A stretch of DNA of 64,000 nt, from assembly GCF_037042905.1 (NCBI RefSeq), contig NC_087255.1:18476001-18540000 (forward strand). Reading direction: 5' to 3'. The number at the start of each line of letters is the position of its first letter. The stretch's first letter is position 1. The stretch comes from Lytechinus pictus. Taxonomy: Eukaryota. The notes below the pieces were generated by a model. The model made no database searches. It was not told the origin of the DNA and saw only the letters and a program-made list of their open reading frames with translations. The position numbers and the translations under genes are program-made. Positions 4,329-36,502 of the stretch are shown here, one piece after another.

Positions 4329-4474
4329 TCCATTCTGACTTTGGGCACCGGTCGAGGATGGTGACCGGCCTCCTCTCTCCGCCGGCGAGCAGCACGGAGG
4401 ATCTCCACCACATCTATGTTTTCATCACGCGGGAAAAGCCGACAGACGCTTTCACCGCACTTGGGCTCGATTTC
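4329..4474 (-). CDS. YTHDC1: YTHDC1 exon, end of YTH domain ([26 protein letters not shown]...)
   Basis: CAG acceptor at 4477-4475 and GTGAG donor at 4328. Continues GRDGQ|EIE in phase 0 and ends in phase 2. Confidence 0.93.
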
Positions 4475-7400
4475 CTGTAACAAAATAGGGTAAAGAATCA
4501 TGCTTGCACTGGAATCTGGTCTGAGAATAGTCTATATCTGGTCATTATATCCTGAAATTTTCATAAATTTCCCATCACTTAATTGTCAATCTTCATAATT
4601 TATATTAATCATCGTATCTGCAAGATCAACAAAGCTACCAAACAACTACAAGTACTACCTTTACAACTCTGGAACGAAAAAATACAACATTTAGCTTTTT
4701 TTTTCAAAGTTTTTATTGAAGGATTACTATAACTAGAGTATCCTACATGTCTCTCTTTACAAATCTTGACTGGTTTTCTATCAGGTCACTGAAATGGATC
4801 AGTCTAGTCCAGTCTCACAAAGAGTTGTGATTGATCCGATCAACCTCCACTTCCCGGAACCCCAATGTCATATTTTTTCCTACAGGAAATTTACCCAATG
4901 TCCTTTTGCAAATAAAGAGGAGCAAACTGAATTGTCAAGAAAAAGAAGAATGCATAATATCTAGAAAACATTAATCACAACTCTTTGTAAGACAGGATGA
5001 TACAGAAGTTTCCTTCGTATCAAGATTAAATTCACCCATTGAAGGATTACTGTAACTAGAGTATCCTACCTGTCCGTCTCTCCCAATCTTGACTGGTTTG
5101 CTATCATTCCACGGGTTATACAGATGAGTGGTCTTGGTGAAGGGTAGATCGTTTCTGGTAATCCAATCAACCTTGAAGACTCCTCCCAGGATGGAGCGGT
5201 TCATCCCGTTGGGAAGCACCCAGTTGATAGGCTGGCCGTCTCTACGGGACTCGCACCGCATACGGGCAAATCCTACAGTAGGAGACACACATCAGGACAT
5301 CAGTAATGATCTTATATTCACACTTTTTAATGTACTGGTAACTTCGACTCAATGGATTTCTTTAGGGACCACAATTTAAGAGGTAGAGGAATTCTTTTGC
5401 CCGTTTTACAAAGAGTCAACTTCAATCGTAACATGGCTCAGCAGCCAATCGCAATTGAGGTCTCCATGTTTTTTCCAATAATGACAAGACACCTTAGTTG
5501 TAGGTCTTCATGAAACATGCCAGTTATGTCTCAAGCCACGATTAAAGTCCCGGCATGTTCTGATAAAATATTATTCTGTAGTCATCACTGGTGTGAGTAT
5601 TCCACTTCAGAATTGGATCAAGGTCTAATTTCATAAAGAGTTGAAGAACAATGCACAATTTCTATAACAAAATAACTATCAGCCAATCAGATTGATGGAT
5701 TCCAATAGCTTTTACATGTTATTGCGAATTTCTCATTGCAAAAAGTTTTTTGAAACAGGGGCCCTGTCTTACCTTGGAACTTGCCACTTTCTTTGACAGA
5801 GAAGATAAGAAGCACGTTCCTGGATTCGCGGAATGCCTGGTTCAAACGCTGCTCGTTGTAGGGTAACGTGGACCATACGCCCTGCAATTAAAATCAAATT
5901 ATTTCTGCATTAAATCTGAAAAAGGTAAGTAGAATGACTGAATGAGCAATTTACAATAAATATTGAAGAAACAATATTCATAACCTATCCCTCAAAAATG
6001 CAGAATATAAAACATTACACACATTTATGTTGCTTTTTTTGTTTATATCGGCTTATTTAACTCATGGAAAAAAGTTGAATAAAAATATTGTAATTACCAG
6101 TACCGCGGTAAGTGGAAAATATTTAGCAAAAATACTGAATGCCTTGTGATTTTACGGCAACAAAATTCTATAATCTAAAAGCACAACATTATGCTAGCTC
6201 ATGATGATGCTAATTCTATTACAGAAGTTAACATAACACATCATATACAAAATATTGATGAAAAAGGCAAGATACTTATGATATAGGCCTACATATATAT
6301 TGTGATGAGGTTGATGTCTGCAAGAGTCCATTATCCATGTTATACAACATTCACTTGTTCTTCCAAGTTTACATGAATGATATTTATTACATGGTCACAA
6401 GCTCCTCATCTCCACTTATGTTCTCTTTCTCTTTCCTCCCAACTTCTTTCTCTCCTTTCTTATCCCCCCTCTCATTCTATCAACAGTCCCTCTCCCAATT
6501 CTCTCTCTCTTTCTTTCTTTCTCTCTTTGTCTTTCTAGTATCCAACAATCACTGAAAATGTTAACAATCATTTCCTAATACATGTACGAAAGGGTACACG
6601 TGGTTGGATAAGCTAGAGCTGCTATAATCATGAGGATGTTTCCTGTCATTCTATTATAGAATTTTTTTTTTTTTGAGGAATTGAATACAGGAAACAAAGA
6701 ATGATACAAAAAGGATTTTCATCAGCACGGCTCGAGCAAAAAGACTGGTACAAAACTCAAATAATGAAAGTCCACATAACATCATTATGATTATTTATTG
6801 AAGGTAATAATATTAAAAATAATCCATAGAATTTGAAGAGCGCACTTTCCATCATAATTTATGCTCAAGGCGCTGAATAAATAAGTGTAAATAAATCATG
6901 TTGAAGCTATCAACTGAAAAAGAGACTAGATTTTAATTCGTCATGCGGACGAATTAGGTGGTCTGTCCTTATTGTCGCCATCATGATCACTATTACCATG
7001 TTCAAGCAGATCAATATGATCTTCATGATGACAACGGAATGTTCATTATTGATGGAATACTTGTGAAAGACGGGAGATGATAAAGAACTGTGAAAAGGGT
7101 CTCTTTGATATATGAAAATACATGTGATATGAAAATAGTAATTATAATCTGTTTAATCTTGCTTAATTTTAACTTTCATACCTTTTAAATACCATAAAGG
7201 ATCATGTACGAGGTGGTAAAAAGAAAAAAAAATGAAAATAATTCTTTGTTCACCCCCAGGACTCGAACCTGCGCCCCCGAGAACTCAAGTCAAGTGCGTT
7301 ATCCATTGAGCCACAATATTCCCCATAGAGATTACACGTTCCCATAGAGATTACACGTAAGCAAATTTGAGAATTGCAAATCCTATTTTGCAAGCGAAAA

Positions 7401-10400
7401 ACGGACATGATTCCGGCATCTGATCGAAAAAACAGGTCGATAATTTCGAAAGCTTAGAATCTAAGCTACAACATACTAAAAGCTCAGGAAAAACTGACAA
7501 GAAGAAATGGAGATATGGCTCACGAAATAGAGGAATGTCGAATCTAGTTTTGAGAAAAAGTCATGTCCCATAGAGATTACACGTAAAATGAGGAAAAATG
7601 ACATGCCTCTTTTCATCGCAATTTTACACCATGATGCGTTTTTCAAAATGAAAATTTATGTTAACTGTCGAGAAAGAGTACATTCTAAACTACGACATAT
7701 CGAAATCTGGGCGAAAAATGATCAATATTCACGGAGTTATGATCAAATTTGCATAAATTTGATGACGTCATTTTTGAAAAAATGAAATTTTCAGTTTAGG
7801 CGCAATTTTGATGACGTCATGATCAAATTGAGGGACAATGGTGACATGAAATCAAATCTACAACTCATACTCTATCGATATATGAAAAAAAAAATGGGGT
7901 CAACGGACTATTTAAAGAGGTATAGTGAATTTTCAATTGCCCCCTTTTTTTGGCCATATATGGCCCTGTAGTGAGAGCTCGCGCGCACACGTGCTGCAAA
8001 GTTTAACAGGTGATAATTTCGTTATTACTTGTCGTAGAAGGTTGATCAAGGTATCAAATTGTTCAGAATTATATTATCGGTGCATTGATATAAAAAAAAT
8101 GGCGATTCTATGTTGGAAGATGCAATTACGCGCGAAAACGTGCGCGCATGTGCGTGCGCGCGTTTTTTTGCAAAATGCTTAAAATGGCCTGAAACGTATG
8201 GAAAATTAATTTGGAACGAATGTGAGCATTTTAAAATTTTAATGCGCGCGTACGTGCGCGTCGAGGTGCGCGCGCGGAATTTGATGAAATTTTTAGTTGA
8301 CCGTTGACCTGAAGTTGATGTATACCAAATATAGTTGATTTTTGATGACTCGTTATCGAGATATGATAATGACCTGATTTTTACAAAATGGCGCCTGGAT
8401 GACGTCACGATGACCTAATGACCTTGAAAAAAGGAGGACACACTTCCGAAAGCTTAGAATCTCAGCTACATCATACCAAAAGCTCAGGGATAACTAACAA
8501 GAAAAAATGGAGATATAGCTCACGAAATAGAGGAATGTAGAATCTAGTTTTGAGAAAAAGTCATGTCCCATAGAGATTACACGTAAAATGAGGAAAAATG
8601 ACATGCCTCTTTTCATCGCAATTTTACACCATGATGCGTTTTTCAAAATGAAAATTTATGTTAATTGACGAGAAAGAATTCATTCTAAACTACAACATAT
8701 CGAAATCTGGGCGAAAAATGATCAATATTCACGGAGTTATGATCAAATTTGCATAAATTTGATGACGTCATTTTTGAAAAAATGAAATTTTCAGTTTAGG
8801 CGCAATTTTGATGACGTCATGATCAAATTGAGGGACAATGGTGACATGAAATTAAATCTACAACTCATACTCTATCGATATATGAAAAAAAATTGGGGGT
8901 CAACGGACTATTTAAAGAGCTACAGTGAATTTTTAATAGACATGTTTTTGCCCATATATGGCATGTAGTGAAAGCTCGCGCGCACACGTGCTGCAAAGTT
9001 TAACGGGTGATAATTTCGTTATTACTTGTTGTAGAAGGTTGATCAAGGTATCAAATTGTTCAGAATTATATTATCGGTGCATTGATATAAAAAATTTGGC
9101 GATTCTATGTTGGAAGATGCAATTACGCGCGAAAACGCGCGCGCATGTGCGTGCGCGCGTTTTTTTGCAAAATGCTTAAAAAGGTCTGAAACGTATGGAA
9201 AATTAATTTGGAACGAATTTGAGCATTTTAAAATTTTAATGCGCGCGTACGTGCGCGTCGAGGTGCGCGCGCGGAATTCGATGGAATTTTTAGTTGACCG
9301 TTGACCTGAAGTTGATGTATACCAAATATAGTTGATTTTTGATGACTCGTTATTGAGATATGATAATGACCTGATTTTTACAAAATGGCGCCTGGATGAC
9401 GTCACGATGACCTAATGACCTTGAAAAAGTTGATTTTACTAGAAATCATTGGGCTTGATGACTGACAGAAATTTGAAGGAAATTTATCATGTCAATTTCG
9501 AATGAACGTGTGTACAAAAAAGTGTACGGAAGAAATAAAAATAAAGAAATAAAGAAGAATAAATAAAGAAAGAAAATTCTGGCGAAATTAATAGGTGATC
9601 TGTCGTTGACAGACCACCTAATAAACTGTTATGAGAGGGTATCACTAATCTGCAAAAGCAAACCCTGTCACCTAAAGAGAGTACACAATCAATGAGATAA
9701 AAGATAACATAATAAGACTGGAGAGTTGTGAAAAATTCAATTTTCAAGAAAATTAAGGCATAATAGGATGTGATGAATTTGTCAGAGTTGTCAGATTTCA
9801 GAGTTGATCAATGATGAGTCTTCGTAATCTAAATAGTTAAATGACAAGCTAAATTTCTATTGCAATTGAATTTGGCCCAGTCGAATCATGCAGATTTTAA
9901 TTGACATCTCAACTGTAAAGATGCAGCATTGTGGCCCAGTGGATTAGTCTCCGGACAGAGGGTCGTGGGTTCAAATCCCAGCCATGGCGTAGTTTCCTTC
10001 AGCAAGGAATTCATCCACAGTGTGCTGCACTCGACCCAGGTGAGGTAAATGGGTACGGACAGGAAGTAATTCCTCGAAAAGCTGAGTGCACCTGAATAGG
10101 TAGCCTAGCTTAGCCGGGGTAATAATAATAGCAGGGCCCGCTGGAAAAACAGTTTTCGGAACTGAAGTGGCTACCCTGGGTAAATATAACATTATCATTA
10201 TTATTAAAGATGAATCCAAGAAACAAAATACTTTTTTCTGTTAAAATATGAATGAAATTACTTGAAAGATACAATTACAGTGTAATTTCACACTTTGAAA
10301 CTTCATAGTCAAGTTGTCATGTGCAGTACAAATTAAGTATCCTTTGAAATGTCTGTCAAATGAAAATTTGTACCATTGATAATAGGCATTATATTACCAC

Positions 10401-13400
10401 CATAGATCTACATGTAGAAATAATCTAAGGCAAAGTATTATCATTACACTGGCTTTGGCTTGGGGAACCGTTTCCAGGAATTAATCCTGCCGGGTACCCA
10501 TTCACCTCGGCTGGCTTGAGTGCAGCACAATCGGGATCAATTTCTTACTGAAGCAAATTACACCATGGCTGGGATTTGAGTCTACAATCCTCTGTTTCAA
10601 AGTCTTGAGATCTATCGGGTCACACACTCCACATACATTATATCAATTATATATCATTGCAAAATAACATACATCAGCATGATCTCAGACAGCAATGTTT
10701 TGAAATAACTAGCCCACAGTAAACTTGACAATAAGATGAGATTTACAGGTAAATTTGCATTCTAGGCAGACCTTCCATAAGTCAAATATTTGCCCAAGTT
10801 CAGCTCTCCAAATGCATTCAATATGTTCTAAAAGCTGCTGGAATATTGTAAAGAATACTTCGAATGCATTCAAAATAAAAATCAAATTAAATTAAAAAAA
10901 ATAAAAAGAATGAAGTTAGAATGTACTTAAAACGCAGCTTGATATTTTTCTCAACTTCACTTGTACTTGGAAAGTTTTGAACATGACCAAAACATTCAGG
11001 ATGACCAAAAGAATTGACCAAAATATTTATAATTTTTTAACAGAGTACCGTCGCTTTTGATACCATATTTTTGTAGAGAATGATGAAAAACCCCCACTAC
11101 CAAAATTTGGTGGGAATCGGTCCATGGGGGCCTTAGATATGACCTCATGAATACAGAATTAGCTCCATTGAAGTTAGTGTATTATTGGCCTGGTCCTAAA
11201 TGTTAGGAACCAGGCCAAAACACATTGACTTTCACGGGACTAATTATGTATTCATGAGGTCATATCTAAGGCCCCCATGGACCGATTCCCACCAAAATTA
11301 CCACACTTTGGTATTCTATATGCCTGAATACGCACAATTTTTCAATCCGACTCCATTGCGGATCATATTGGCTCTAGTGTGAAGCGTCCTAAGGTCAATA
11401 TGAACTCCAGTTGGGTGAATTCAAAATTCCCTTCCAATTTTTTTTCCATTCCAGCCAATTCTGCTTGATTCCTGCTGATTCTTAATGAGTGAGATGTCTT
11501 TTTTTTTTACACTGCTTGAGATACATATATACCTTGTTCAAAATTGGAATATGATTTTAAAGTTGGGGACCGAACTTGGCCAGCTACACACAATGCCATC
11601 AATGTGCTTGCAAATGCAACATTGTACAAAACATTATCTGCCACCCCCAAGCCAAGAATAAGCTGCCAAAAAATGAATTTTGAGGGGGGGGGGGTTAGAG
11701 AGAGCTTGAAAAAGTACACCCTGTGCAGTAAATGATTTGTCAAAATTGATCAACAATAACACACACACACACAAGTACTTGATTGAATGAAGAAGTTCAG
11801 TGAGAGCTTCAAAGAAGAAAACAAAGTTTAAAGTATTGAGTTTCATTCAAGCATGAGATGTGCAAACTTCCAAGCAGTCCCCCAAAAGTGTGAACGAACT
11901 CTTTTATCTAGTCTTTTAAATAACTTTACTATCCTCTTTCAGATATGCTAATTTCTTGGTTTTAGTTTATGAAGACCAAATTAGTATTTTGGGTATTTAC
12001 AGGAAACCTTCCCTGGCAAGTTATTGTTGGATGGGGTAGGTCACAATTCTCATATACCCAGTGCTTTTTTTTTGCAACATGCAACAGGAAACCACAATGG
12101 CAGCATGAAACCATAGGTCAATGGCAAGTCAGCATTTACTTTCAACATGTGCACAATATACAATAGGGAGCTGATTATTGCAACACATTGTCGGACCAGA
12201 TGGTCCACAATCCAAGGAGTATCAGGATAAACTGTAGCGATTGCGCAAGTATTTCATTCTTTGGCCCATAGACTGCTTGCAGAGAGACCACACATGTTTC
12301 TGGTACTTCTCATTCTTCCCATGGCAAAATATTTTCATCACCGTATCTGTGTTTTGAAAAAGAGAGAAAGGGAACGATTAAGCATTTATGATATATTGGG
12401 ATGTTCAGAATGGAATACCAGAGATATTCCAAGAGTTAGAGGTAATAAGGAATCAAGGATGAGTGTAATATTGGCCCTAATGTGCAGAATACTTCTGGTA
12501 TTTTAACAAATACAGCAATCCAATATAATCATTATCTACCCCCCCAAAAAAAAAAAAGATTAGTGATTGAGTAAATCATTTCCCTTGTCACAATCAGTTA
12601 TTATGGCTTCACTTCATACAATCAATGTGATCACAGAAGTGTGACTTACTTTAGGACGTCATGTAGTATCACTGCGCTCTATGTTGAACATTGCATTATC
12701 ACTTACAATTCTCAGTTTCATTTTTTCTGGGACACATTGTATATTGAGTGATACATACCTTCAATTTTCTTGACTAAGTTGGGATCCAGTAGTTCATAGT
12801 CTTTGTATTTGCCCGAAGACCGAAGAGTGCTTTTGATCAGGATACTGTCGCCAAAGAGGGCCTGGGCCAACGCCCGAGTGAGGGATGTAGCACCATCTAC
12901 CTCAGAGCAGGCATTAATCCAATCTCGTTCAGCAAGTACATCGGTAATAATACCTAAAATAAAAGACCAAATGTTTAATTAATCACTCTTTCCATAAGAG
13001 TAGTGAAATACTCAGACTGGATTTCACATTACCATTCCTAATTGGAAGCATGTGTGTTCTGTCTCAATAAGGGTGTGTTGAGACGAGTTCAGAAAACACC
13101 ATGCCATAATTCATAATCATATATATATAGAATCCGTTTCTAAGGCTTGGGTTATGAATGAGTTACATAGTGAAACGCCGTGGGGGTCTTGCCTGCATTA
13201 GGCACTTCAATGTAGCAGCAGAGCTAACATTGAAAAGTACAAGTACAATGAATAATTTTTTTTCAAAACGAGAGAGAAAAAAACGAGACATTTACAGTGG
13301 AATCCCAAGTTCAATGACCTCAAACGACATTTGTCAGTGATCATACTCTTCTGTAGACATTTCAAAAACTTAACCTTGGCTAAGATTTCAAATGTTGACA

Positions 13401-16400
13401 AAGCCGCCGTCACCTGTATTCTGGCTCTGCAGCCGAAACAAACCAACTCCACATAGTTTGATGCAGTGTTGCTGCTAGACATATCTACACTGGCAACATA
13501 CCAGAGGTGATGCTCAGCATTCAGAGGTTTATATCTCTGAGGCATTTCAAGAGCAGCTCCGGAGTTGCTGCCAAACAACACGTCAGTATAATTGCAGTAC
13601 GTGACATGTAACTAGAACATAAGTATTAGCAGACAAATGGTTGAAAATAAGACAAGATTCGAATACATACCGTCAGCTTGTACAGATCCTACTCTTTCCT
13701 CTCTACCACCATAGGAACTCGACTCATTGCCAGCCTGATAAGGATGTGCCATGTTCGGTTGTGTGTACGGACTGTGATTCAAGGAATGAGATCGTTCCTG
13801 AGGGCTACCACGGTAATGGTGTCCAAACTGAACAATGTTTGAGCCATTATTCTGGGCAACTGATTGCACATTGTTTCTGTCTATGTAGATATCTCTCCTT
13901 TGATTTGCGTTTCCAAAGTTTGTGGCACTATTATTCCGAGGGTTTGGGGGTGCTACGGGCAGCCTACAAGCTGTATGTATCCTTGAAGCGCTCCTCATGG
14001 CAGCATTTCTTCTTCCAACAGTACTTTGAGAATTAATGGTTTGTGATTGGGAATGGAATCTTTGAGAACTACCACTCTGTTGCAGCTTTTGGGCATGACC
14101 CTGATGAGGTCCAGGAAGATTTGTATTGTAGTGCTGTGACTGACAGGGCATGCCCATGTACTGTGCATTGCCATTCTGGCTCAAAACTTGAGGAATATTT
14201 TTCTGAACTCTACGTGAACTGGCATCAGTTCGATTCAGCCTCAGCCTTACTGGAACTGATCTGACCGATTGTGTCGCTGTTCGACGATCAGAGTTTTGGG
14301 CATGCCATCGAGAATCACTATCCTCTACACAAATAAGCTCAGTTTTTCCTCTCACATCTTCGCTCTGATCTGCATGAAATAAGTCTTGTGAAGCCTTTGT
14401 TTTCAGCCCTCTCTTTTGATCACCCAAAGGGACATTTTCATAAAGAAACTTAACATCCTCATCATCAGACCCAGCAGATGTAGCGAGTATCTCTTGTAGA
14501 GACTGTATATCTGCATCATGTTCATAACCTAAATGATTTCCTGCCTGTTGATTTAGCAAGCTTTGAGCAGTGTCCATAACCTTGCTTGAATGCACTGCAA
14601 CTGGATTATCATTTACACATGAATCATCAGAGAGCACAACAAGGTTTGGGTCATGGAGAGCCACTCCTGGATGATTGTATGAAGTGCTGGGTTGGGAACT
14701 ATCCGGCCAGGTGTCCATACCATCGTCGCAACTGAATTCAGATTTGATTCGAATGATGACAGGGCCATCAAGATCCGCCTGGAAATCCCTCTCCTCACCA
14801 GGAAAGGTTACAGGTGAAGAATTTTTATCCATAGCGGAAGATTCATTGGCCTCTTCGTGGACGACATTAGATCCATCAAACTTACGTGTTCCTTGCACAA
14901 TACTCTCAGAATTCTCTTTCTCAGCTGTGCCAAGTTCACATGAATCTGGTGATGTCTTCAACGGAGACGGATCACCTTCTTCCCCATTTGCAACATTACA
15001 ACTAGCTTGATCATCATGCCTTAACTCTTGTTCTTGTTCTGAATTATTTGGTGGACTAGCAGTATCACTATTTTGTTCAGCATCATTTTCAACTCTGTTA
15101 TTTTGCACAGAAGTATGGCCATGGCTGGAAATTACATCAAGGTCACCAAGATCACCACAGTTGTCTGCGCCGCTGTCTGGGCACCTAGAATCCGGCTGAA
15201 AATCGGAAGCAGAAAGACGCTCCTCTGGATTTTCATCATTATCAGGTTGTTCTGGACTTTGACAGCGGTCACTTCTGGTGTCACAGTTATCAAGCGTCTG
15301 TTGGCCATCACTTGTTCCATCCAGATGACCTTGACGCTCCATTAGTCCTTCATCCAATTCACTTTCTCCTTCAATCCTTCTTTCATTGAGGTCTCCTTGG
15401 TTACTCTTCCATCTTCTGAAGCTGTCACGGTCCATTCCAGAGGGGCCTCCAAATTGTTGCATTCTTTTCCTCCTGGGCCTAGGGGTTGGTTTTTGCAGGG
15501 TTGAGCTGGACATCTTGACCAGTTTGTGCAAAACTGTGATCACATTTCCCAAACAACCTTCTAGTTGCTGAATGCGGAGGTACAAGGAACTCTGGGGAAA
15601 AATACAAAAGAATACTTGTTACAACCTTGAAACCAACGATTCCGTCTCAAATGCTGTAACACCCCCCATGAAAAAAAAAGCTCTTCCATTTTGGAGGGCA
15701 AGGCAATTTTTTGACACACGAGTAGAAATCTCAGAATTTGTTATAATATGAAGGGCACCATGGCAATTTCTATGGTTTTATCAAGGACAACCAGGCACAT
15801 TCCAAAGTTGGCATTGACACCGTAGCAACTTTCAATCCCTACAAAAAAGGTAGACTACACATGGTCAAAAATGTGTAGACTAACATTTAGCTAAAGAGAA
15901 TAGATTGAATAGTCATGTTAAAACCACAGCAAATTAACTGGCTTGCATTCTTATACATGTAGCATTGCTCTCATAGAAAGTCCAGAAAACATGTTAATGC
16001 ACCAATTTCATATGCATGTATTCAACAACAAACATTGCTTTTAACAATTGCTGATCACACTGATATCATGAGTATAATGAGTGAGAGAAGTGAAGTGGAA
16101 TGAAACCTGAGATTTTTCTTTTTAGCACGTTTTTGGCAACCCAGTGTTTTAGTCTTATAAATGTACTGGGTTTACGCTTGCTGTGGGGAAAAAATGCCTC
16201 TTCTATTTCTTTACAGGGACTTTAACAGCTGAGACAGAACTTGGAAATTGATTTTGAAAGTGGAACAACTCATTTTGTGTCAAATTTGTTGCTGACACAG
16301 TCCCCCCCACCCACGTGTGTTTGGCAATACAATGTGAAGATTCATCCTGGCGCTCATGCAAACAACCTGGCTCTTTGTTAAATTTGCACAATCGAGATTG

Positions 16401-19400
16401 ACATTTATGTTTCTTTCAATTGTTCCCCCCAAAACACAAATCTTTATTTGTGTTGTGTGAGTTGTGATAGACTTCTTCAAATGTTAGTCAAACCTTTGGG
16501 GGCAGGAGGGTTGCCAAATACTGATTTTTTACTTTGCTGTGATAAACTTTCAATTCTGTAAGTCAGATCTTTTCTTAGCTTGGGTTCCTTTATTTTTGGT
16601 AAATGGAAATAAAAAGAAATTATAAGATATCATTTACCTGATCATGTAATTTAGCTGATGCATCCTGAAGCAACCTTTCCAGATCAGCAGTATCACTTCT
16701 CATTGTGTTCTCTGTTGGGTGGTCAAAGGAAGTTGGAATGTCATGTCCACCAAAGGATCCAAAGTTTGAGCGATTATCGGAAAATCTTTCTCTCTTTCTC
16801 CATCTATATTCTCTTTGGCTTTGATATTGAGATGGGTAAAATGCATCATCCTCCTCCTCTTCTTCTTCTTCCTCCTCCTCATCATCAAATTCAAAACTCA
16901 AATCGTCAAAGTCATGCCCATTCAAGTCAATAGAATTATAAGAAATGTCGGGATGCCCCTTGTCAGAGAAACACGGATCCTTATTACTATCATGAAAACG
17001 TGCCTTCTGTCTCCGATAAATGTATCTATGTGGTATTCTTTCATGTTTATCACTCAAGTGCCCCTGCACAGTCTTGCAACTTTTAGGTGACCAACCAGCC
17101 TTTTTAGCTTGAAGGTGAACGCTTGGACCACCTTCATTGGAAGAACTGTTCCTCTGCAGGTGATTCTGCACAGGCACTTCTTCATTGGCTGTATGGTTAC
17201 TCTCCCGACTAAGAGCAAATGCGGTCCTACAATCCGGTGACATTTCTGAGGTTGCTGCGGCTGATACAACAAAATGTTTTCTTTTAGATGGATGCATAAT
17301 TGCAGCAGAGTAAGAGTTACTACGTTTCTTTTTGGCAGGTCTCTGGAACGGGGCACCTTGAGAAACACAAACACGGCCTTCCCACTTGGAAGATGAGCCC
17401 AACCCCTGGGGTTTGTGGAGGCATGCCTGGTGTCCACTCCGGGCCTTTCCAGAACCCTGTGAAAGTGATGAAAAGGAAATGTTAATTAAGGTGATTAAGG
17501 CAAAATTTTAAGGAAAAAATATGAAAGAAACTACGTACATGTACAGCACACAGGCAGAAGGAGTAATAGAAATTTGGAATGCAGTACCAACGAGATATTC
17601 TTTTCTTTATTCCATCATTTCTATCTTATTTCTTCAAAAATCAACATACATATGCATTTACCCCTTGATAATACCCCTGAAGATAATTTCATGCTTTAGT
17701 TGTCATGTCTTTGAAAAAGTATAAGGAACATATTTTTTTATCCATGCCAAGCTTCAATGTCTTTGGCCCATCTTCATCATTCTCTTTGGGTGGTTGATCT
17801 ATTTTGGAATTTTGATTTTGCAATTATTAATATCATTGAATTGAATCGAATTATTTGTGAATTATAACTTAATCCTTCCTCTTGAAAAGCAGGCAAAAAA
17901 AAATTTTAATTAAATTTTCTAAAATAAAAGGTACTGTATGTAAAACAAATAATTGGAAACCTGAGAAAAAATATATACATGTATTTCAAATCAATTCTAA
18001 AAAGACCTAAGTTCAAAAAGAAAGATTAAGGGTAGCTCTAAAAAGATTTTAGGTATCCAGGATTTTGCAAAATATTTCCAATTACATTTTGAAAAGATCT
18101 TTGGTAAACATTCATTTGGTAAAGATTTTGAGTATACAGGAGAATTAAGTTTTGAAATGATCTTCAATAAACAGTAGTTTGGAAAAGATTTTCAGTAAAG
18201 TTGTGAAAATATATGCAGTATACTACAGTTCTAAAAAGAAATAGAATACAGTTCTGAAGAGAAGAATTCTGTAAACCATCAACTTGTCAGATTCCGGTTT
18301 AAGATCCTGCATAAACTCCAAATTACATTTTCTTTTTTTTTTAAGTTCGGTGATACATGTACAGTATGTAAAATGGACACTGCACATGTATGTATTCGAA
18401 TCATTCCCGATCAACCGATTCACAAAATCAAGTAAAGTTTTGAAGAAAAGGCAACTGAAAATTAAATTCCAGCTCCCATTCAGCCTGTGTGCTGCAGATG
18501 CATATGAACATTTTGATTAATAGCAGACAGAGAGAAGAGTTACAAAATGTCAGAAGATAACATTAAAAGAAGAAACCACTCTATATGCTGAGGATTAATG
18601 TACAGGTAGAAAGTTTCATTCTGATAAAATCAAGTCCGTGATGCACTTCCATCAACAAAACATAACGTCAGAAAGTGGCTTGGATTCCAAGGCCAGACTA
18701 CACAGGTCCATGGCAAGAATTGAGCAAAAAACAAACTGTTAATTTTTATTATTTTAAAATAGTCCAGGGCAATTTCACATTCACTTTTTATTTTTTTAAG
18801 TGTTCAAAGCAAGCAAATGATGAGACATTTGCAAGGGTAATGGTAGCATAGTTCATTTGAGCTCTTGGGTATGATAGATTTGAATGTTCTGTGATACAGT
18901 TCTTTAAACAGTTTATTATCTGTGTTGGTACCAAGAGCTTTTTTCTCAAAAAGTTCACTTTAAATGGGTTTCCACTAAATGCTAGTCACACTCACGTCCT
19001 TTCCATATAAAATGGCTTTCCGTGGCACAATCTCCAAATTTCAGTGTTCCTCTGCGCAGTGTGGCTGAAATCACAGGATCCAATTTCAGAGCAAGAAGGA
19101 TGCTGTCGCACCTACAGATGCACTTACTGATGGTCTCAGCGTACACTTCCACTTTGTAAGGCACATGAAGGCTGCTTCCTCATCAGCACAACAGCACTGA
19201 TACTCACAGGACTGATCATACATCTCTCCATTGCATAATTTGCATCATAAAGCACTTCAGTGGTCCTCCAGGACATTGTAGACTTTGATGACTGACGATA
19301 TCCAGCAAGCACACTTTTGTAATAGAAGATTGCTGACAGTTGCCGACGCTTCATCCAATGCACAAACACTGGATTTCCACCATATCCATATCTGACTTCC

Positions 19401-22400
19401 GTATGGCAAAGTTCATCCGCTTCCAACAAATTTCACCTGTCCAGTACTAACTTTAAATTTTGCATATATATTCAGACATATTACATGTATATATTCATAC
19501 ATGATGACTATCTATAGACAATTTAAAAGCATGACAAAGGATTTTGTTTACAAAATAATTTATAGAAGTATGGTAATCTTTACAAATCAAATATCACAAA
19601 TTTCAAGCTAACATGATTTACAATTCAAATGTCATTCATTAATAAAGCACATCTATTCACATGAATTTTCCTGATGTTTTATTGTCACATTATGAATCAT
19701 ATCTACCATACCTATGAACATCATCTCCTTCACAATTCTCCTTTCATTCAACCCAAACTCAACCACTCTAAAGCGATTCCATAAGTCACATTTTCTTTCA
19801 AATCCTTATAACTTGGCTGCATCATAACAGCTGTAGACCATATTGAAATTGAATGTGAGCAAGTAACCTTTTGTTGGGTTTTCTTTTTTTTGTCCCTTAT
19901 GATTGGTCTCTTTAGAATGGTAACACGACATCTGCTCCTACTACAATTGCTCCGGTCCTAATATCTCAGCGGGCACAGGGTTTAATAGAGTTAGAAATGT
20001 AATAGAGTTTTTGGTTCAGAATAATGTAATAAGGATTAGGGTTTATTTAGTTTTCGGAGATTAGGTTATATATCCTTGGCTTAACGTGCAGAGTTTCCAT
20101 CGGAGCAATTGTCGCTGTAGCAAATGTTATGGAACCCTTTAGAATAGGAGAATTACATTTCATTGAAAGAATAGACTGCCTTTTTATACATTTAAAAAAA
20201 AATCAAAGTGATCCACAACAACTTTGGAACAAAGGGAATTGTTGGGGTACAACATGCAATACTTAAATTGATTATGACGCAAGAACTGAAGAATTGACTG
20301 GATTGCAAGGAAATTCTTATCACCTGATAATCGCTTCTCCATTTTTTTAAACACTTTCTTCACTTCTTGCTCAACCTGTGTATATCACTCTGCATACATG
20401 TAGTAGGTCTCTCCCTCTCTGTCTGCTCATCTCTCTTTCTTTCTCTGTCGGTCTCTCTATTTCTCTTTCTTCCACCTCCCCCCTTCTCTCTGTTTCTATC
20501 ACCCTCCCTCCTTCAACAGCCAGCTTCCTCTTATACTCTTGTACCACCGTCGCATCAACAGATGCACACACCAACAAACCCTTACCTTAGCTTTGGCAAG
20601 GGAAATGTTCTCGTGGTTGTTGCTCTTGATGAGGAAGTAGCGAGCATCCCTGAACAGGTACTTCATCTTAGCTGTCTGATCTCCTATAATGGGTCACAAA
20701 CATATAATAATAGGCATTCATATAGCGCCATCTATCTCGAAATATTCTATTCCGAGGTGCGTTGTTATTATTATTACCCCGGCTTTAGCTCAAGCTGCCT
20801 TTCAGCGCTCATGCATTCAAGGAATTGATCCTGCCGGGTACCCATTCACCTCACCTGGGTTGAGTGCAGCACAATGTGGATGAATTTCTTGCTGACGGAA
20901 ATTACACCATGGCTGGGATTCGAACCCAAGACCCTCTGTTTCAAAGTCAGAAGACTAATCCACCGGGCCACAACGCTCCACATATGGGTATTAATTGCAG
21001 ACTTGCCAACATTTGAAATGCAGAAAACTGACCCAATTATTGTGAGGGGGCAGAGCGACAGAGAGGGGGGGGGGTCCCCCCTCCCACGTTAGGAAGCTTT
21101 TGCATTTTTGGCCTTACATTTGTGCAATCTGGTGCATACCTTGAGAGAAAATTCAGCATCAAGAATTACTGTACCTGGGTGCGTTACATACATGTATGAT
21201 TTGCTCAACCAGAATACAGAAATGGATAACTGGATATATTTTTTTAAATATATTAATCATTGAAACACTAATATATTGTTGTTGGGCTGTTAAAATCCTG
21301 CATCTCAAAATTCAAACGATGATAACTATGCTATAAAATTATATCTATGCATTATAGAAATGAACAATACCATTGAAATAAGCTTCATTTCTTTTGTTCA
21401 TATGGCTGGTCAAACAGAATCAACAAAGTACGCCAGCACTGGTTGTCAACTTGAGCAGAGAAAAGGTACAGCAGGGAAAAATTTACACGGGGGGCTGGGG
21501 GCGATTTATCCCCGGATAATGCTCAAAAGAGCCCTGAAAACTAAAAAAATATGAATAAATAAAAAAATAGGCTCCTGGAAATCCCCATTTATCGCAATGT
21601 TAAACTTGTCCAATGTTGCAGATTTAGACAGTAAGTTATAAAAAGAACCACCCCCCCCAAAAAAAATAATAAAAATAAACAAATACTTTTTTGCTCGAGG
21701 TACACTTCCATTACGTAAAATCCAACAATAAACAAGAGCTTCCGACTCCTATATCAAAATCAAACATGACATTACCTCCTTTCACTTCATTAACGGATGA
21801 GGACAGTTTGGCTTTCTTGCCGTTCTCGTCTGCAAAAAACAAAGGAAAAATTCCAAGAATATCAACATCTAGTTATCTTGAACAATATTAGTCAGCTCTG
21901 AGTCAACGGCAGTTGGTGAAACGTCATGACCACAGAGAATTTATAGTTTTTACTTTGCAATGTTCACATTTCCGATAAGATTTCAAAACAGACTAATATT
22001 AAACATAAACAAAAGGAAAAGAATAATGAATTACTCACCTATTAATTAAAGTATTGTAAATTATAGTTTGAATGATAATTATATCAGTTAGTGATAGATT
22101 TAAACAACTTCACATGATCATACAAGTATTTTCTGAAGTATTATTTCGGAATGTTTGCATGAAAGTTTAGATTTTGGAAATTTTATACTCATCTATGTTT
22201 TATACAAGTCTTAATTCAAGGAGAATGAGGGTACAAGTTAACTTGTGTAAAAACAGAAATATCAAAGAAGAAAAAAAACAGTGAAATTTTGAGAAAAATT
22301 TAACAAAATAATAGGAAAGTAACCAGTATTTCTATGTTGATAATGTTGTGGACATCCTCCCATTGGCAATGAGGCAAACATGTGTTACATTACAGCTGTA

Positions 22401-25400
22401 CAACTCACCAATTACTTTTCTTAAAATTTTACTTGAATTGTCACTTTTGTCATGTCCATCTACAGATCGGGTCTTTTGGTTTTTTGTTTTTTTTTTGGGG
22501 GGGGTTTTCATGGAAGGACATGTAAAAGAGGTTTCGTAAAATAAAATCATGGACAAAGAGTTTGTACTATCATAGAATAAGATAAAAATATATATATTTG
22601 GGGTATATTTTCAGTGTTACAAAGGGAAGAGTTAAACTTCTGTGACTTCACAAATCTTGGTTTACACTGTATATTTCTTATGCTTTCTGTATTAATGATT
22701 AAAAAAACCTATGCTGTCATCATTCCAAAACAGTTATTACTTGTTGAAATACCATTAACGCTGATACATTGAACCTCTAATTAGTGCAAAATTATGGTAT
22801 CTTGTATTTGAACCACAATTTTAGACCAGTTTTCAAATTACAGCTAAATGGACCATTGATTTGTATTATTATTATTATCATTATTTGATAAGAACTTCTC
22901 CAGATCATTTGTTACATTCCACTTGAAGAAATGGACTTACCATCAGAATCCGAAATATCCTGTCCTTCATACACAATTGGAGAGAACTGACGTTTTCTGT
23001 CCCTTCTAGACTGTTGTCTGTTGTCATGGTCACTATCTGCGTCATCTGTACACAAAGAAAGATTTGACTCGTGAAAATCAATCCCAATGAAAATCACTTT
23101 TTATGTAATTCCCTTGAATAATTACTGTATGACATATTGATAACCAATCCAGCCTAGAATAACAAGCATACATTGCAATTGCAGAAACCCCTTTTCTGGA
23201 TAAGAATCAACATTTAGCAAAATTCACTAAATTAGGGAAATTTTCATCAAAGTCACACTCTGCAACTTTGAAATAAATCACCAAACAAACCTAAAAAAAA
23301 ATATTATAAAGAACCTGGGCTGGTATTCAATTCAATACTTAACCGATAATTTTAAGTATTTTACTCAGTATTCTGCTTAAGTAATAAACTTATCAATTTT
23401 TGGTATTCAATTGTCTTTTTGGCTAAGTATTTTGCTGAAATCTAGGTCATCCCACACCCAGCTTAAGTCTGGCTTGTGTGTACTTTACAAATGTACAAGC
23501 ATGCAGTCATACATCTTGTGCACTGGTAGGTACATAAATTGCACAATGGGCATTTTTTGGCTTAGACGTTATGACGTCACAATGGTTTTTAGTAACTATT
23601 TTTAATAAAGTTGACTTGATAAAGTAAAATACTTAGAAGTGATTTGAATATGAGTTCAAGCATTTTGCTTAGCCAAGTAAAATGCTACGTAAAATACTTT
23701 CTCCATCAATACTCTCACTTAAATACCATCCCTCATCATCAACTAACCAATCTGACTGCCTGAAGAAGTAGAGCTTGCTTCGCTCCTCACGTCAAAGGTG
23801 TCGCTGAAATCAGGTGGCTCCATGTCTCCGTCTCCGTTAGCCTCTCCTTCAACAACGTTGCTCTCGTCCTCTTCTTCGATAGCTTCCTCCTCGTTCTCCT
23901 CTTCTTCCTCTTGTTCTTCGTCCTGCCCGTCGGCACCTTCCTTGCTGATCTCAACGTCTGGAATAGCTTCAGTGGATATCTCTGCAGAATTGTCAACGTC
24001 TTTTATGTGGTCGTCTGAATCAAAGATAAGGAGTGGTTAGATTCTTTTTACACTTATAAAGGAATGGCAATTTGACTAACTGTCCAGTATACACAAGGTT
24101 TTCCAGCCTTTTTATATCTTTCCTTCTTGTAAAAATCAAGCATTATATAATGAACAGGATGTACATGACAAGTGCATAGTTTCAAGACAACCAAATAATC
24201 CCCTCTTAGATCTTTCCTGCATACTAATCCAGCTGTTGTTTCCTTACTGTAGCTTGGACAAGTTCTAATCCACCTTTTGTCACTTTGCATGCCTAAATCC
24301 ACTACACATTTTATACCCCTTTCTCCAATCAAACATTTGGTGGGTCTGGGCAATATTTTGGATAAAGAGTATTCGAACCATCTGGTAAGCAATTTACAAA
24401 GCTTAACAAAGTGTCAAAAACTAAGAAATGGAAAAAAATGACAACTATTTACTCCTTGAAATGTGATGTAATATCATAGGCTTGTTTTCTCTTGTTTTGT
24501 CATTTTATTTAATTTTTCTAATTAGTAAGAGAGTTCTTTAATAGATTCACTTACCTTCAGTTACTTCCATAGGAGTCTCAGAATCTTCTGGGGCCTTTGT
24601 AAAAAAAAAAGAACAAATTCATGAGAGCAAAAACGCACATTCTCTAAAGATTGGACATTTAGATCTGAAACAACTGGGCATCTGCTGGATGTAATCAAGT
24701 ATCAAAGCAATATTTCCTTGTAAAGATATTTACTGGGCCCCGTCTTACAAAGAGTTACGATTGATCCAATCAATCGTAACTCTATGGAAATCCACCAGGG
24801 TCGTAATTTTTTCTACAGGAAATTTGCACAATGTCCTTTGTAACCAAAGAGAAGCACAGTGAATTTTCAAGAAAACGATAAATGCATGAATATACATCAT
24901 AGTTAGAAAATATTTTGAACAAACATGCATAACAGATGTTGAAGTTGCTGGCCGTCCATAGTTGCAATTGATCGGATCAATCGCAACTCTTTGTAAGACA
25001 GGGCCCAGATCATCTCTCACTCCACTCTTATCATGCATACATCAAATATTTGGGTTTTACTTTCATGTGTTCTGGAGTACATGTAGCAAAGAAAATACAT
25101 ATAAGATTTTTGCAACAAAAAAAAGCCTGCTCAATATTCATGAAAATAAAATCCCCAATATTATTTTCCACTATTATGATATCATCAGGTTAATATATAA
25201 AGTGACTTGGATATGTGATTCATGTAGTCATATCATGATTATAAAAAAGCTCATTTTTTACATTTAATAAAAAATGTAATTAACTTAATGATTTTCAATC
25301 TATTAAGATGTGCTTTAAATGCAAAATATTTGTAGCTTTACATGCGACACATGAATTATGTGATTGTGAATACCCACTTACACCTATTGCAGTTGATAGA

Positions 25401-35030: not shown

Positions 35031-36502
35031 TTGAACAATCAAAGTAAAACATGTTGACTCTATAACCTTAGGAGGAAAGAATGTTTTTGTGACAAAATGT
35101 ATATATTTAAATCAATATCAGAATAACAATCTACGGTATAATGACAGACATTTTCAGAAAAAGGCACAATATTATCAAGTAAACAATTTAGATCCAGTTC
35201 AATCCAGCATGAACGACTCACTATCGACCGCTCCCGTCACCAAGCCCTCCGCATCAGGTACTGGTAGCTCGACTGCCGAAAGACGGACGGGAGCCCACCG
35301 CATCGGGCAGCTCGACTGCCGAGAGACCGGCTGTGACAAGGGTAGCTCGCTTCTCTTATATCTGGACAGCTCAACGATAGAATCTTTTAATTTTAATTTT
35401 TTTGTTGATTTGAATATATTCTATAACAATTCAGATACATAATTGGATCGTAGTTCTACTTACCATTAAAAAATTTCGATCATTTGCGCATCCAAAAATT
35501 TGATGAACTTTCAAGCTCCGATATCCACACTTCACAGGCGAGTATCCACATTGAAACTTATATGTACAGAAAGAGCACATTTTCAACTGTCTGTATCAAG
35601 GCACGAGATTGCATCAACTATGTGCGCATGCGCATGAAACCCCATTTTCGATGAGCCTCCCAGACAGAGGCGATGCCACTTGCAGCGAAACCCGCGCGAA
35701 AACCGTGCAGCCAAAACCAGCGCTCGCGATGCGCCCGTATTCGCACATACCTAATTGGTCAGTGAGCCAACGCAGTTCAGCAGAACAACCAAAATACAGT
35801 CATTACAGAGACTGAAGCTTTTGGTCTAAAAAATTGCATGCACACGTAATTAATAATTAATATGTCCAGGCATTCTGCATTCCTCATTTGTTTTGGCACA
35901 TCTCCTACAACACAGTGACTCTCTCAACTTCTCATCATACTCTCCTGCGATTCCATAGACTAGAGCGCCATGCCATTCCCCATACCAGGCCAGCCAGCGC
36001 CAGTCTGGCATTGTCTTCATGGTCTTGACTTTGCCAGCCACTGCAGCACACAGAGCCTCATCTCAGAGGCAGAGCACACAACATGCATTAACATTACAAG
36101 GACAAATTAGACTGTCAAATCCGACACATCACGATCACACTTCACAACTTCACACACAATATATGGAGGATAAAATCCATTGAATTCATGAAGATAAATA
36201 TAGCATGATACCTTTACTACCATCCTGCTCTGGCTCTGACATATCTGACCTTTTATTTCAGGTCGTTTTATCAATTTTCGGCAGTGTTTCCTGTCACTTT
36301 TCATGAAAACTGAAGCTCTCGCATCGAATCTCGCGATAATTTCATTATAAATCACGCGCAAGCTAAAAAATAACACGAGACTCCATACTCCCTCTACGTC
36401 CATAAAACAGCAGCATCATACGTAAACTGGGAAGAGTATAGAAAAGCAATTACAAATTAATTACTTAATCTAAATTACAAGAGACATTACTCGGCATGTA
36501 AT

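What the first reader, a model, noticed from the sequence alone, without database searches (positions are those of the whole stretch)
12222..20683. Possible YTH-to-BEN domain switch: an intact BEN cassette inside the YTH-splitting intron of YTHDC1, in splice phase with it
Seen: the YTHDC1 exon ending ...SLAKAK (phase-0 donor at 20585) normally joins GVWST at 5881. Inside this 14.7-kb intron, on the same strand, a clean acceptor at 17457 opens in phase 0 into a stop-free four-exon frame of 1019 codons ending in a BEN domain. That exon begins at an acceptor, not an ATG. Established: the m6A aromatic cage of YTHDC1 uses the Trp of GVW and the Trp of WVLP, both encoded downstream. BEN domains bind DNA in repressors and insulators (BEND3, BANP, Insensitive), and Drosophila mod(mdg4) uses alternative C-terminal exons, including a BEN isoform. 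Inference: alternative terminal-exon choice could give two proteins with one N-terminus, an m6A-RNA reader and a YTH-less DNA-binding BEN protein. I know of no described YTHDC1-BEN isoform.
Basis: partly seen in the sequence, partly recalled or inferred. Interest (0 to 1): 0.93.

Follow-up and report, generated by a model that had tools for sequence, protein, structure and literature searches.

The report
Sea urchin YTHDC1 YTH-to-BEN isoform switch
In the sea urchin Lytechinus pictus, the gene for the nuclear m6A-RNA reader YTHDC1 splices about 60-70% of its transcripts (two RNA samples) into four exons inside the intron that splits its reader domain, making a protein with the same front half but a DNA-binding-type BEN domain; public databases hold this form only as unnamed automatic models.

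Summary

**Anatomy.** On the minus strand, the YTHDC1 exon 20683-20586 ends in phase 0 (…SLAKAK). A four-exon, 1019-codon open frame starts at the acceptor at 17456 and ends at 12222.

**RNA evidence.**
- Stranded RNA reads join 20586 to 17456 in 42 and 60 reads (two runs), and one contig shows the same joint in a second study.
- The canonical join 20586 to 5881 (GVWST…) has 19 and 36 reads.
- No exon, transcript start or other junction feeds the cassette, so it is not an independent nested gene.

**Conservation.** The same fusion is an unnamed RefSeq model in L. pictus (100% identical to the window), L. variegatus and Strongylocentrotus purpuratus. In all three, the cassette lies in the same YTH-splitting intron with conserved splice sites. 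dN/dS is 0.05-0.19 for the BEN part.

**BEN identity.** The Pfam match is below threshold (E 0.007). A predicted structure (pLDDT 88) matches only solved BEN domains at the top (Z 7.7-10).

**Novelty.** No paper found describes this. The mechanism (alternative terminal exons) is ordinary; the YTH-to-BEN swap is a new example. An earlier, unchecked note of this scan describes an hnRNP U-BEN swap elsewhere in this genome.

**Not shown.** Protein, DNA binding and the poly(A) site.

The parts
36212..36242 (-). First coding exon of YTHDC1 (ATG at 36242; MSEPEQDGSK); 5' UTR not mapped
   Evidence: Exact spliced mapping of RefSeq protein P0003 on the window
28064..28162 (-). Shared coding exon 2 (acidic N-terminus)
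26029..26555 (-). Shared coding exon 3: K/T/A-rich basic low-complexity region (aa 36-215, pI 10.3)
24555..24594 (-). Shared coding exon 4
23748..24014 (-). Shared coding exon 5: Glu/Asp-rich region
22941..23045 (-). Shared coding exon 6
21776..21829 (-). Shared coding exon 7 (…[14 protein letters not shown]); RNA loose ends at 20685 read into it
20586..20683 (-). Branch-point exon (coding exon 8): first 18 of 135 YTH profile positions, ends …SLAKAK in phase 0; donor GTAAGG at 20585
16638..17456 (-). BEN cassette exon 1 (273 codons, starts GSGKARSG at an acceptor; basic motif [25 protein letters not shown], acidic run)
   Evidence: Junction 20586>17456 in 42+60 reads and 1 contig
13671..15591 (-). 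BEN cassette exon 2 (640 codons +1 nt; helix [20 protein letters not shown] at its start, then long low-complexity region with conserved islands such as IKSEFSCD and LVVLSDDS)
   Evidence: Junction 16638>15591 in 25+31 reads and 2 contigs
12759..12953 (-). BEN cassette exon 3 (N-terminal two thirds of the BEN domain)
12222..12346 (-). BEN cassette exon 4 (last BEN helix, stop TGA at 12224-12222); followed by an expressed 3' region of unknown end
5773..5881 (-). Canonical YTH exon 2 ([10 protein letters not shown]…; first cage Trp); the alternative partner of donor 20585
   Evidence: Loose-end consensus at 20585 maps exactly to 5851-5880; Pfam YTH E 1.5e-12
5070..5272 (-). Canonical YTH exon 3 (…INWVLPNG…; second cage Trp)
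   Evidence: Pfam YTH E 2.2e-14; human YTHDC1 structures E 6e-29
4340..4474 (-). Canonical YTH exon 4 (end of YTH domain; 3' boundary approximate)

Best explanation
The window holds the Lytechinus pictus YTHDC1 gene on the minus strand. One promoter and eight shared coding exons (407 residues) feed two mutually exclusive sets of 3' exons. The shared part has an acidic tip, a K/T/A-rich basic low-complexity stretch, a Glu/Asp-rich stretch and the first 18 positions of the YTH fold.

**Shown.**
- The donor at 20585 splices either to 5881, completing the YTH m6A-binding domain, or to 17456, entering a four-exon cassette that ends in its own stop codon at 12222.
- In two RNA samples the BEN joint carries about 60-70% of the flux through the shared exon.
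- The cassette has no transcript start or other feeding junction of its own.
- The arrangement, splice sites and phase are the same in L. variegatus and S. purpuratus.
- The BEN part is under strong purifying selection.

**Inferred.**
- The choice is made by competition between the proximal acceptor (with a poly(A) site behind the cassette) and the distal acceptor.
- The BEN isoform is a 1426-residue nuclear protein that cannot read m6A, because both cage tryptophans are encoded downstream.
- It instead brings the shared YTHDC1 N-terminal low-complexity region to DNA or chromatin through a C-terminal BEN domain of the BANP/BEND3/Insensitive type. A short helical segment across the cassette exon 1/2 junction may help it to pair.
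For: **RNA reads.**
- Joint 17455..20585 (GT..AG on the minus strand) is seen in 42 reads (29 starts) in X19 and 60 reads (39 starts) in X20, plus one contig in X15, which belongs to a different study.
- Loose ends at 20585 number 19 and 36 reads. Their consensus maps exactly to 5851-5880, the GVWST exon.
- Inflow at 20685 is 67 and 102 reads, close to the sum of the two outflows, 61 and 96.
- All reads are first-mate-on-plus, so the RNA comes from the minus strand.
- Raw-read depth in 17551-20550 is at or near zero (at most about 1x) outside a repeat. No start pile-up is reported.

**Gene models.**
- RefSeq XP_063962983.1 maps at 100% identity with GT/AG junctions.
- Orthologues in L. variegatus and S. 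purpuratus read …LAKAK|GS….
- In both genomes the cassette lies between YTH exon 1 and the GVWST exon.

**Selection.**
- BEN part: dN/dS 0.05 (L. pictus vs L. variegatus) and 0.19 (L. pictus vs S. purpuratus).
- Cassette exons 1 and 2: 0.34-0.58.
- Shared N-terminus: 0.17.

**Copy number.** The cassette is single copy in the 812-Mb genome.

**YTHDC1 identity.** Pfam YTH E 2e-14, and human YTHDC1 structures at E 6e-29 against YTHDC2 at 6e-13.

**BEN identity.**
- Pfam E 0.0073 over profile positions 1-68 of 76.
- Language-model neighbours are BEN clusters, score 0.92.
- hhalign against BEN domains of the same genome gives P 7.5e-4 over 72 columns.
- The AF2 model has pLDDT 88.
- The top 14 Foldseek hits and top 12 VIA-align hits are all solved BEN domains (BANP Z 10.0, 85 residues, 2.6 A). 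The next, unrelated hit has Z 6.1.
Against: - No protein-level evidence exists.
- The 3' end of the BEN transcript is not mapped. There is no AATAAA or ATTAAA within 1.4 kb of the stop. The only support is 34-53% of the sampled words of the 1.9 kb behind the stop in probable RNA runs and a contig that breaks at a palindromic repeat.
- The tissue or stage of the two RNA samples is unknown, so the 60-70% share may not be general.
- The BEN match is below Pfam's gathering score, and full-length proteins give no Pfam hit.
- The good AF2 model used an alignment that included true BEN domains from the same genome, which could pull the fold towards BEN. The model made without them was poor, pLDDT 51.
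- Z values around 10 are not exceptional for helical domains (note).
- DNA binding, nuclear location and pairing are inferred only.
Confidence: 0.85

Rival explanations
1. The cassette is an independent BEN gene nested in the YTHDC1 intron, with its own promoter and a 5' exon somewhere in 17457-20585 (for example the candidate exon 19208-19436). The in-phase acceptor would then be a coincidence.
For: The cassette exon has an in-frame ATG 52 codons in (…AAIMHPSK). Nested same-strand genes are common in large introns.
Against: Raw stranded RNA gives 0-1.3x depth over 19151-19350 and 0 over 17551-18150. No joint goes to any intronic exon, no start pile-up is reported, and the number of 20586>17456 joint reads (42 and 60) equals the local depth of cassette exon 1 (25-45 and 40-58). 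Gene models in three species all join the cassette to the YTHDC1 exons.
Confidence: 0.03
2. The BEN joint is unproductive splicing: a poison or decoy terminal cassette that lowers YTHDC1 reader output, with no function for the encoded protein.
For: Intronic cassettes with stops are a common way for RNA-binding protein genes to regulate themselves. No protein evidence exists. Cassette exons 1 and 2 evolve fast (47-51% amino-acid identity between L. pictus and S. purpuratus).
Against: A 1019-codon frame is kept open in three species. dN/dS is 0.05-0.19 on the BEN part and below 0.6 elsewhere, with conserved motif islands. The stop lies in the last cassette exon, so a transcript ending there is not a decay target.
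Confidence: 0.05
3. The fusion protein is real, but its BEN domain serves as a protein-protein or non-specific chromatin module rather than a sequence-specific DNA binder. The isoform would act mainly as a dominant competitor for partners of the YTHDC1 N-terminus.
For: The BEN match is weak at sequence level. The shared N-terminus (K/T/A-rich, pI 10.3, then acidic) could itself bind nucleic acid or partners. From established knowledge, some BEN domains, such as BEND3 BEN1-3, are not known to bind specific DNA.
Against: The best structural matches are the DNA-bound BEN domains of BANP, BEND3-BEN4, Bsg25A and Insensitive. The last helix is basic, with Lys/Arg invariant in three species (K1409, R1415, K1417, R1420, R1422). 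Neither point is a test of binding.
Confidence: 0.2

Closest known systems
Drosophila mod(mdg4) (common BTB exons with many alternative C-terminal exon sets; its C isoform carries a BEN domain)
   Same: One shared N-terminal part is joined to alternative C-terminal modules, one of which is a BEN domain (C isoform cited in PMC4281564). The output is a family of chromatin proteins from one locus.
   Different: From established knowledge, mod(mdg4) uses trans-splicing and dozens of mostly FLYWCH endings. Here there are two endings on the same strand in one intron, joined in cis as far as the reads show. The alternative to BEN is an RNA-modification reader domain that is cut in the middle.
Arabidopsis CPSF30-S / CPSF30-L
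   Same: One gene gives a form with a YTH m6A reader domain and a form without it, with different behaviour in the cell (PMC11445912). From established knowledge, the choice is by alternative polyadenylation in an intron.
   Different: In CPSF30 the short form simply lacks YTH. Here the YTH-less form gains 1019 other residues and a different nucleic-acid-binding fold. The gene is the YTHDC1 orthologue, not a cleavage factor.
Host-transposase fusion genes (CSB-PGBD3, KRABINER; Cosby et al., bioRxiv 10.1101/2020.05.07.082677)
   Same: A DNA-binding module with its own acceptor sits in a host intron and is captured by alternative splicing, while the parent isoform persists.
   Different: The cassette is not a recognisable transposon. 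It is single copy, has three introns and no flanking inverted repeats, and BEN is not a transposase domain. A mobile origin is possible but was not shown.
BANP, BEND3, Insensitive/Elba (BEN-domain DNA binders)
   Same: The predicted fold of residues 1330-1426 superposes on their BEN domains at Z 8.8-10 over 83-86 residues. The BEN domain is C-terminal and follows long disordered sequence and a short helix, as in BEN-solo factors.
   Different: Sequence identity is 13-22%, and no orthology was found outside sea urchins. The N-terminus is that of YTHDC1.

Membership tests
YTHDC1 (DC1-type YTH m6A reader gene) | YTH domain (Pfam PF04146) over the family's cut-off | tested here: met
   Exon 5272-5070 scores E 2.2e-14, 53.8 bits, and exon 5881-5773 scores E 1.5e-12, 47.9 bits, against a cut-off of 22.1. 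The exon 20683-20586 covers profile positions 1-18.
YTHDC1 (DC1-type YTH m6A reader gene) | Closer to YTHDC1 than to YTHDC2, YTHDF or CPSF30 YTH domains | tested here: met
   Human YTHDC1 structures score E about 6e-29 (103 bits). YTHDC2 scores 6e-13 and CPSF30 1.5e-5.
YTHDC1 (DC1-type YTH m6A reader gene) | Aromatic-cage tryptophans (the Trp of GVW and the Trp of WVLP) are present and lie downstream of the branch point | tested here: met
   GVWST is at 5881 and INWVLP at about 5222, both 3' of the donor at 20585. That these are the cage residues rests on established knowledge of human YTHDC1 (W377, W428).
BEN domain (PF10523) | Match to the Pfam BEN profile over the gathering score | tested here: inconclusive
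   The spliced C-terminus scores E 0.0073, 16.9 bits, against a cut-off of 23.2, over profile positions 1-68 of 76. Single exons and full-length proteins give no hit. hhalign against eight BEN domains of the same genome gives P 7.5e-4, probability 25%. Language-model neighbours are BEN clusters at 0.92.
BEN domain (PF10523) | All-alpha BEN fold superposable on solved BEN domains | tested here: met
   The AF2 model has pLDDT 88.2 and pTM 0.79. Foldseek ranks 1-14 are all BEN domains, TM 0.42-0.67. VIA-align ranks 1-12 are all BEN, Z 7.7-10.0, against 6.1 for the first unrelated hit. Caveat: the alignment used for the model contained BEN paralogues.
BEN domain (PF10523) | Binds DNA | not testable with these tools
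   Needs SELEX, DAP-seq or EMSA with residues 1321-1426.
Alternative terminal-exon domain swap (mod(mdg4) / CPSF30-S,L type) | The same 5' exons are joined to mutually exclusive 3' exon sets in real RNA | tested here: met
   Both joints from donor 20585 are seen in the same runs: 42 and 60 reads against 19 and 36.
Alternative terminal-exon domain swap (mod(mdg4) / CPSF30-S,L type) | The proximal exon set ends in its own stop and poly(A) site | tested here: inconclusive
   The stop at 12224-12222 is confirmed. The 1.9 kb behind it is held at 34-53% of sampled words in probable RNA runs.
Host-transposase fusion | The captured module derives from an identifiable transposon (multi-copy relatives, terminal repeats, transposase domain) | tested here: not met
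   All three tested cassette exons are single copy in the 812-Mb genome. No inverted repeats flank 12222-17456. No transposase family turned up in Pfam.

The most novel reading that the evidence does not exclude
Sea urchins may have a class of 'RNA-reader to DNA-binder' switch genes. In these, BEN cassettes lodged in introns of nuclear RNA-binding protein genes are used as regulated alternative endings. YTHDC1 is the case shown here. The BEN isoform would tether the partner-recruiting, condensate-prone N-terminus of the RNA-binding protein to specific DNA motifs.
Probability: 0.15. Interest if true: 0.85.

Novelty: new member of a known kind. Interest (0 to 1): 0.6.

Why it matters
YTHDC1 is the main nuclear m6A reader, and sea urchins are a standard model for early development. 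If most transcripts of the gene encode a reader-less BEN protein, several things follow.

- Any knock-down aimed at the shared start codon or 5' exons removes two different proteins. Expression values for 'YTHDC1' in urchin data sets mix the two.
- The locus gives a natural experiment. The same N-terminal low-complexity region is attached either to an RNA-modification reader or to a DNA-binding-type domain.
- The case shows that a well-supported isoform can sit unnamed in automatic annotation for years. Pfam misses the BEN domain, and the YTH domain is absent from the fusion.
- Together with the hnRNP U-BEN note in the same genome, it points to a possibly recurrent route of BEN-domain capture in echinoids.

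Tried and rejected
- **Pfam on single cassette exons and on full-length P0003, P0004 and P0006:** no BEN hit. Only the spliced 106-residue C-terminus gave a sub-threshold hit.
- **Profile search of the BEN part against PDB sequences:** no BEN hit; best E 0.34, to a ribosomal protein.
- **First AF2 run with three urchin sequences only:** pLDDT 51, unusable.
- **Search for relatives of the cassette outside sea urchins:** none found.
  - phmmer of exon 2 against 1.84 billion representatives found only the Lytechinus and Strongylocentrotus clusters.
  - Word-based searches with residues 400-1276 and 1300-1426 found the same.
  - These searches are limited by length filters, by word sharing, and by what has been annotated. 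Absence in other echinoderms is therefore not shown.
- **L001 (Logan contig carrying P0001):** a genomic piece of exon 2 from a Strongylocentrotus-like urchin, uninformative about splicing.
- **Candidate exon 19208-19436 as a cassette start or switch exon:** not supported by RNA, depth 0-1.3x and no joints.
- **Independent nested gene:** rejected (see rival explanations).
- **Transposon origin:** no copies and no terminal inverted repeats.
- **Poly(A) signal:** no AATAAA or ATTAAA between 10800 and 12224 on the minus strand, only weak variants.
- **Literature:** searches for 'YTHDC1' + 'BEN domain', 'YTH domain' + 'BEN domain' and 'sea urchin' + 'YTHDC1' returned no relevant paper.

Full report
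**What is in the sequence.**

The feature lies on the minus strand. The exon 20683-20586 encodes [32 protein letters not shown] and ends in phase 0 at AAG|GTAAGG. It covers only positions 1-18 of the 135-position Pfam YTH profile.

The rest of the YTH domain lies far downstream:
- [10 protein letters not shown]… starts at 5881 behind ttgcag.
- …INWVLPNG… lies in exon 5272-5070.
- The end of the domain is in exon 4474-about 4340.

These exons score E 1.5e-12 and 2.2e-14 against Pfam YTH. They match solved human YTHDC1 YTH domains at E about 6e-29, against 6e-13 for YTHDC2.

**The cassette.**

Inside that intron, on the same strand, the acceptor …tcactttcacag|GGTTCT at 17456 opens in phase 0. 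Exons 17456-16638, 15591-13671, 12953-12759 and 12346-12222 all have GT/AG borders and give 1019 codons plus a stop. The frame has a stop 17 codons upstream of the acceptor and no ATG until codon 52, so the exon looks internal. All three tested cassette exons are single copy in the 812-Mb assembly. No inverted repeats flank the cassette.

**RNA evidence (the decisive test).**

I laid two raw, stranded RNA-seq runs (X19, X20; about 6% of each read) and the contigs of two older runs (X1, X15) on 14751-20750.

| Junction or measure | X19 | X20 | Contigs |
|---|---|---|---|
| 20586>17456 (skips 3129, GT..AG on the minus strand) | 42 reads, 29 starts | 60 reads, 39 starts | X15, a different study |
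| 20586>5881 (loose ends at 20585) | 19 reads | 36 reads | X1 |
| Inflow from the upstream exon (loose ends at 20685) | 67 reads | 102 reads | X1, X15 |
| 16638>15591 | 25 reads | 31 reads | X1, X15 |

- The loose-end consensus at 20585 maps exactly to 5851-5880, the GVWST exon.
- The loose ends at 20685 read into exon 21829-21776.
- Inflow is close to the sum of the two outflows (61 and 96). The BEN branch therefore takes roughly 60-70% of the transcripts in these two samples.
- All reads have the first mate on the plus strand, as expected for minus-strand RNA.
- Between 17551 and 20550 the raw-read depth is at or near zero (at most about 1x), except over a repeat at about 19998-20115. The candidate exon 19208-19436 has 0-1.3x depth and no joints. 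No place where many molecules begin is reported.
- The number of BEN joint reads equals the local depth of cassette exon 1. Within detection, every cassette transcript therefore comes from the YTHDC1 exons, and the nested-gene reading fails.

**Public models and conservation.**

- A full-library phmmer search with exon 2 found a 1276-residue protein in which the match starts at residue 528.
- Further searches found XP_063962983.1, 'uncharacterized protein LOC129271916 isoform X2 [Lytechinus pictus]', 1426 aa. It maps to the window at 100% identity with the twelve exons listed under parts. This identifies the organism.
- Orthologous models exist in L. variegatus (XP_041475368.1) and S. purpuratus (XP_011681149.2; UniProt A0A7M7HJ72, 'BEN domain-containing protein').
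- All read …ENI[S/A]LAKAK|GS[G/S]K….
- In the genomic loci of both species (L019, L020) the cassette lies between YTH exon 1 and the GVWST exon, with the same donor and acceptor sequences.
- The X1/X2 isoforms differ by a single residue at a shared-exon junction.
- No relative of the cassette was found outside sea urchins. The searches cannot exclude unannotated copies.

| Region | dN/dS, L. pictus vs L. variegatus | dN/dS, L. pictus vs S. purpuratus |
|---|---|---|
| BEN part | 0.05 | 0.19 |
| Cassette exons 1 and 2 | 0.42, 0.34 | 0.53, 0.58 |
| Shared N-terminus | 0.17 | 0.17 |

These are Nei-Gojobori estimates. The cassette is a coding sequence under selection, fastest in its low-complexity middle and slowest in its C-terminal domain.

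**Is the C-terminus a BEN domain?**

- *Sequence evidence is weak but consistent.*
  - Pfam BEN gives E 0.0073, 16.9 bits against a cut-off of 23.2, over profile positions 1-68 of 76 for the spliced C-terminus.
  - Single exons and full-length proteins give nothing.
  - PDB sequences give no BEN hit.
  - hhalign against eight BEN domains found in the same genome with PF10523 gives P 7.5e-4 over 72 columns in the expected register.
  - The nearest language-model neighbours are BEN clusters, score 0.92 with 190 shared features.
- *Structural evidence is stronger.*
  - An AF2 model from an alignment of the three urchin sequences plus seven BEN paralogues has pLDDT 88 and pTM 0.79.
  - Foldseek's first 14 PDB matches are all BEN domains.
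  - VIA-align gives Z 7.7-10.0 for the 12 best, all BEN: BANP, BEND3 BEN4 and BEN3, Bsg25A, Insensitive, NACC1 and BEND6. The first unrelated chain has Z 6.1.
- *Caveats.* The alignment contained true BEN domains. A model from the three urchin sequences alone was poor. Helical folds give middling Z values easily.

I accept BEN as the best reading. DNA binding is untested.

**What the two proteins share and do not share.**

The shared 407 residues are low-complexity:
- an acidic tip;
- a 180-residue K/T/A-rich stretch, pI 10.3;
- a Glu/Asp-rich stretch, 40% acidic;
- the 33-residue YTH stub.

The BEN isoform lacks both cage tryptophans, so it cannot form the m6A pocket. This is inferred from the established human YTHDC1 structure.

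Within the cassette, the islands conserved between Lytechinus and Strongylocentrotus are:
- a basic RPAKK.R.NSYSAA motif;
- [11 protein letters not shown];
- a helix across the exon 1/2 junction ([13 protein letters not shown]…RIQQLE..LGNV);
- IKSEFSCD and LVVLSDDS;
- the BEN domain, with an invariant basic last helix.

Their roles are guesses only: nuclear import, pairing, SUMO-related motifs.

**Mechanism proposed.**

The donor at 20585 chooses between the proximal acceptor at 17457, followed by the cassette's stop and presumably a poly(A) site, and the distal acceptor at 5882. The first choice yields a BEN-ended chromatin or DNA-binding protein. The second yields the m6A reader.

The two joints, their relative use in two samples and their conservation are shown. 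The poly(A) site is not:
- No canonical hexamer lies within 1.4 kb of the stop.
- Probable RNA runs hold 34-53% of the sampled words of the 1.9 kb behind the stop.
- One contig extends about 960 nt past the stop before breaking at a palindromic repeat at 11103-11299.

**Comparison with what is known.**

- The nearest parallel in logic is Drosophila mod(mdg4), which has common exons and alternative endings, with isoform C carrying a BEN domain (PMC4281564).
- The nearest parallel for YTH is Arabidopsis CPSF30-S/L, one gene with and without a YTH domain (PMC11445912).
- The nearest parallel for origin is host-transposase fusion by alternative splicing (bioRxiv 10.1101/2020.05.07.082677). The cassette fails the test for a recognisable transposon.
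- No paper in the held library links YTHDC1 and BEN.

**Earlier notes of this scan.**

These are unchecked leads. They describe an hnRNP U-BEN domain-swap isoform and BEN-carrying transposons elsewhere in this genome. If they hold, the YTHDC1 case is one of several BEN captures. I did not test them.

**Verdict.**

The mechanism is an ordinary one (alternative terminal exons). The particular swap is a new, unnamed example that already sits in automatic annotation. It is of real interest to people working on m6A readers, BEN factors and sea urchin development, but it is lineage-restricted as far as can be seen. Its protein-level function is untested.

Noticed in passing
window 19208-19436 (minus strand): The sibling finding proposed a 'switch exon' with an in-frame start for the BEN cassette (s1-325098). 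In two raw RNA runs it has 0-1.3x depth and no joints. Only low-depth contigs of run X15 cover it, along with the rest of the intron, and these look like pre-mRNA or DNA carry-over.
   Followed up: yes
window 36503-38047 and 38875-40083 (plus strand): There are two long open frames, one with a reverse transcriptase domain (RVT_1, E 4e-39) and one with RNase H (E 1e-8). This looks like a non-LTR or related retroelement. It lies within a few hundred bases upstream of, and opposite in strand to, the first coding exon of YTHDC1 (ATG at 36242).
   Followed up: partly
window 20704-20750, 19998-20115; related copies near 20816-20948, 10472-10604, 28337-28546: A short interspersed repeat occurs several times in YTHDC1 introns in the same orientation (86% identity between two copies). 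It reaches summed contig depths of about 1000-8000 in RNA-derived contigs, so it is a highly expressed or very abundant repeat family. It inflates depth next to the branch-point exon.
   Followed up: partly
window 7426-9263: A tandem duplication of about 1 kb (spacing 997-1000 bases, 92-97% identity) lies in the intron segment between the BEN cassette and the GVWST exon. Each copy holds a 122-codon open frame on the minus strand with no known family assigned.
   Followed up: no
G000:C11:24494447-24496169 (loci L010-L014): Five BEN half-domains (Pfam positions 2-45, 27 bits each) lie in tandem at about 395-base spacing on the same chromosome piece, 6 Mb from the window. They could be an array of alternative BEN exons or a tandem repeat.
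   Followed up: no
G000:C12:27624519-27624743 (locus L005): The best BEN match in the genome (30.5 bits) sits inside a single 2496-codon open frame without stops. Such a long intron-less frame in this genome suggests a mobile-element or viral-type gene.
   Followed up: no
P0002 (XP_054765143.1, older L. pictus model): An earlier RefSeq model of the same gene joins the YTHDC1 N-terminal exons to the cassette through read-through intron sequence (…[31 protein letters not shown]…) and skips the branch-point exon. It is a faulty model that the current isoforms X1/X2 supersede.
   Followed up: partly
window 11103-11299: An almost perfect 97-nt palindrome (84% complementary, 3-nt spacer) lies about 950 nt behind the BEN stop codon. 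The assembled RNA contig of run X15 breaks there, so its end should not be read as a poly(A) site.
   Followed up: partly
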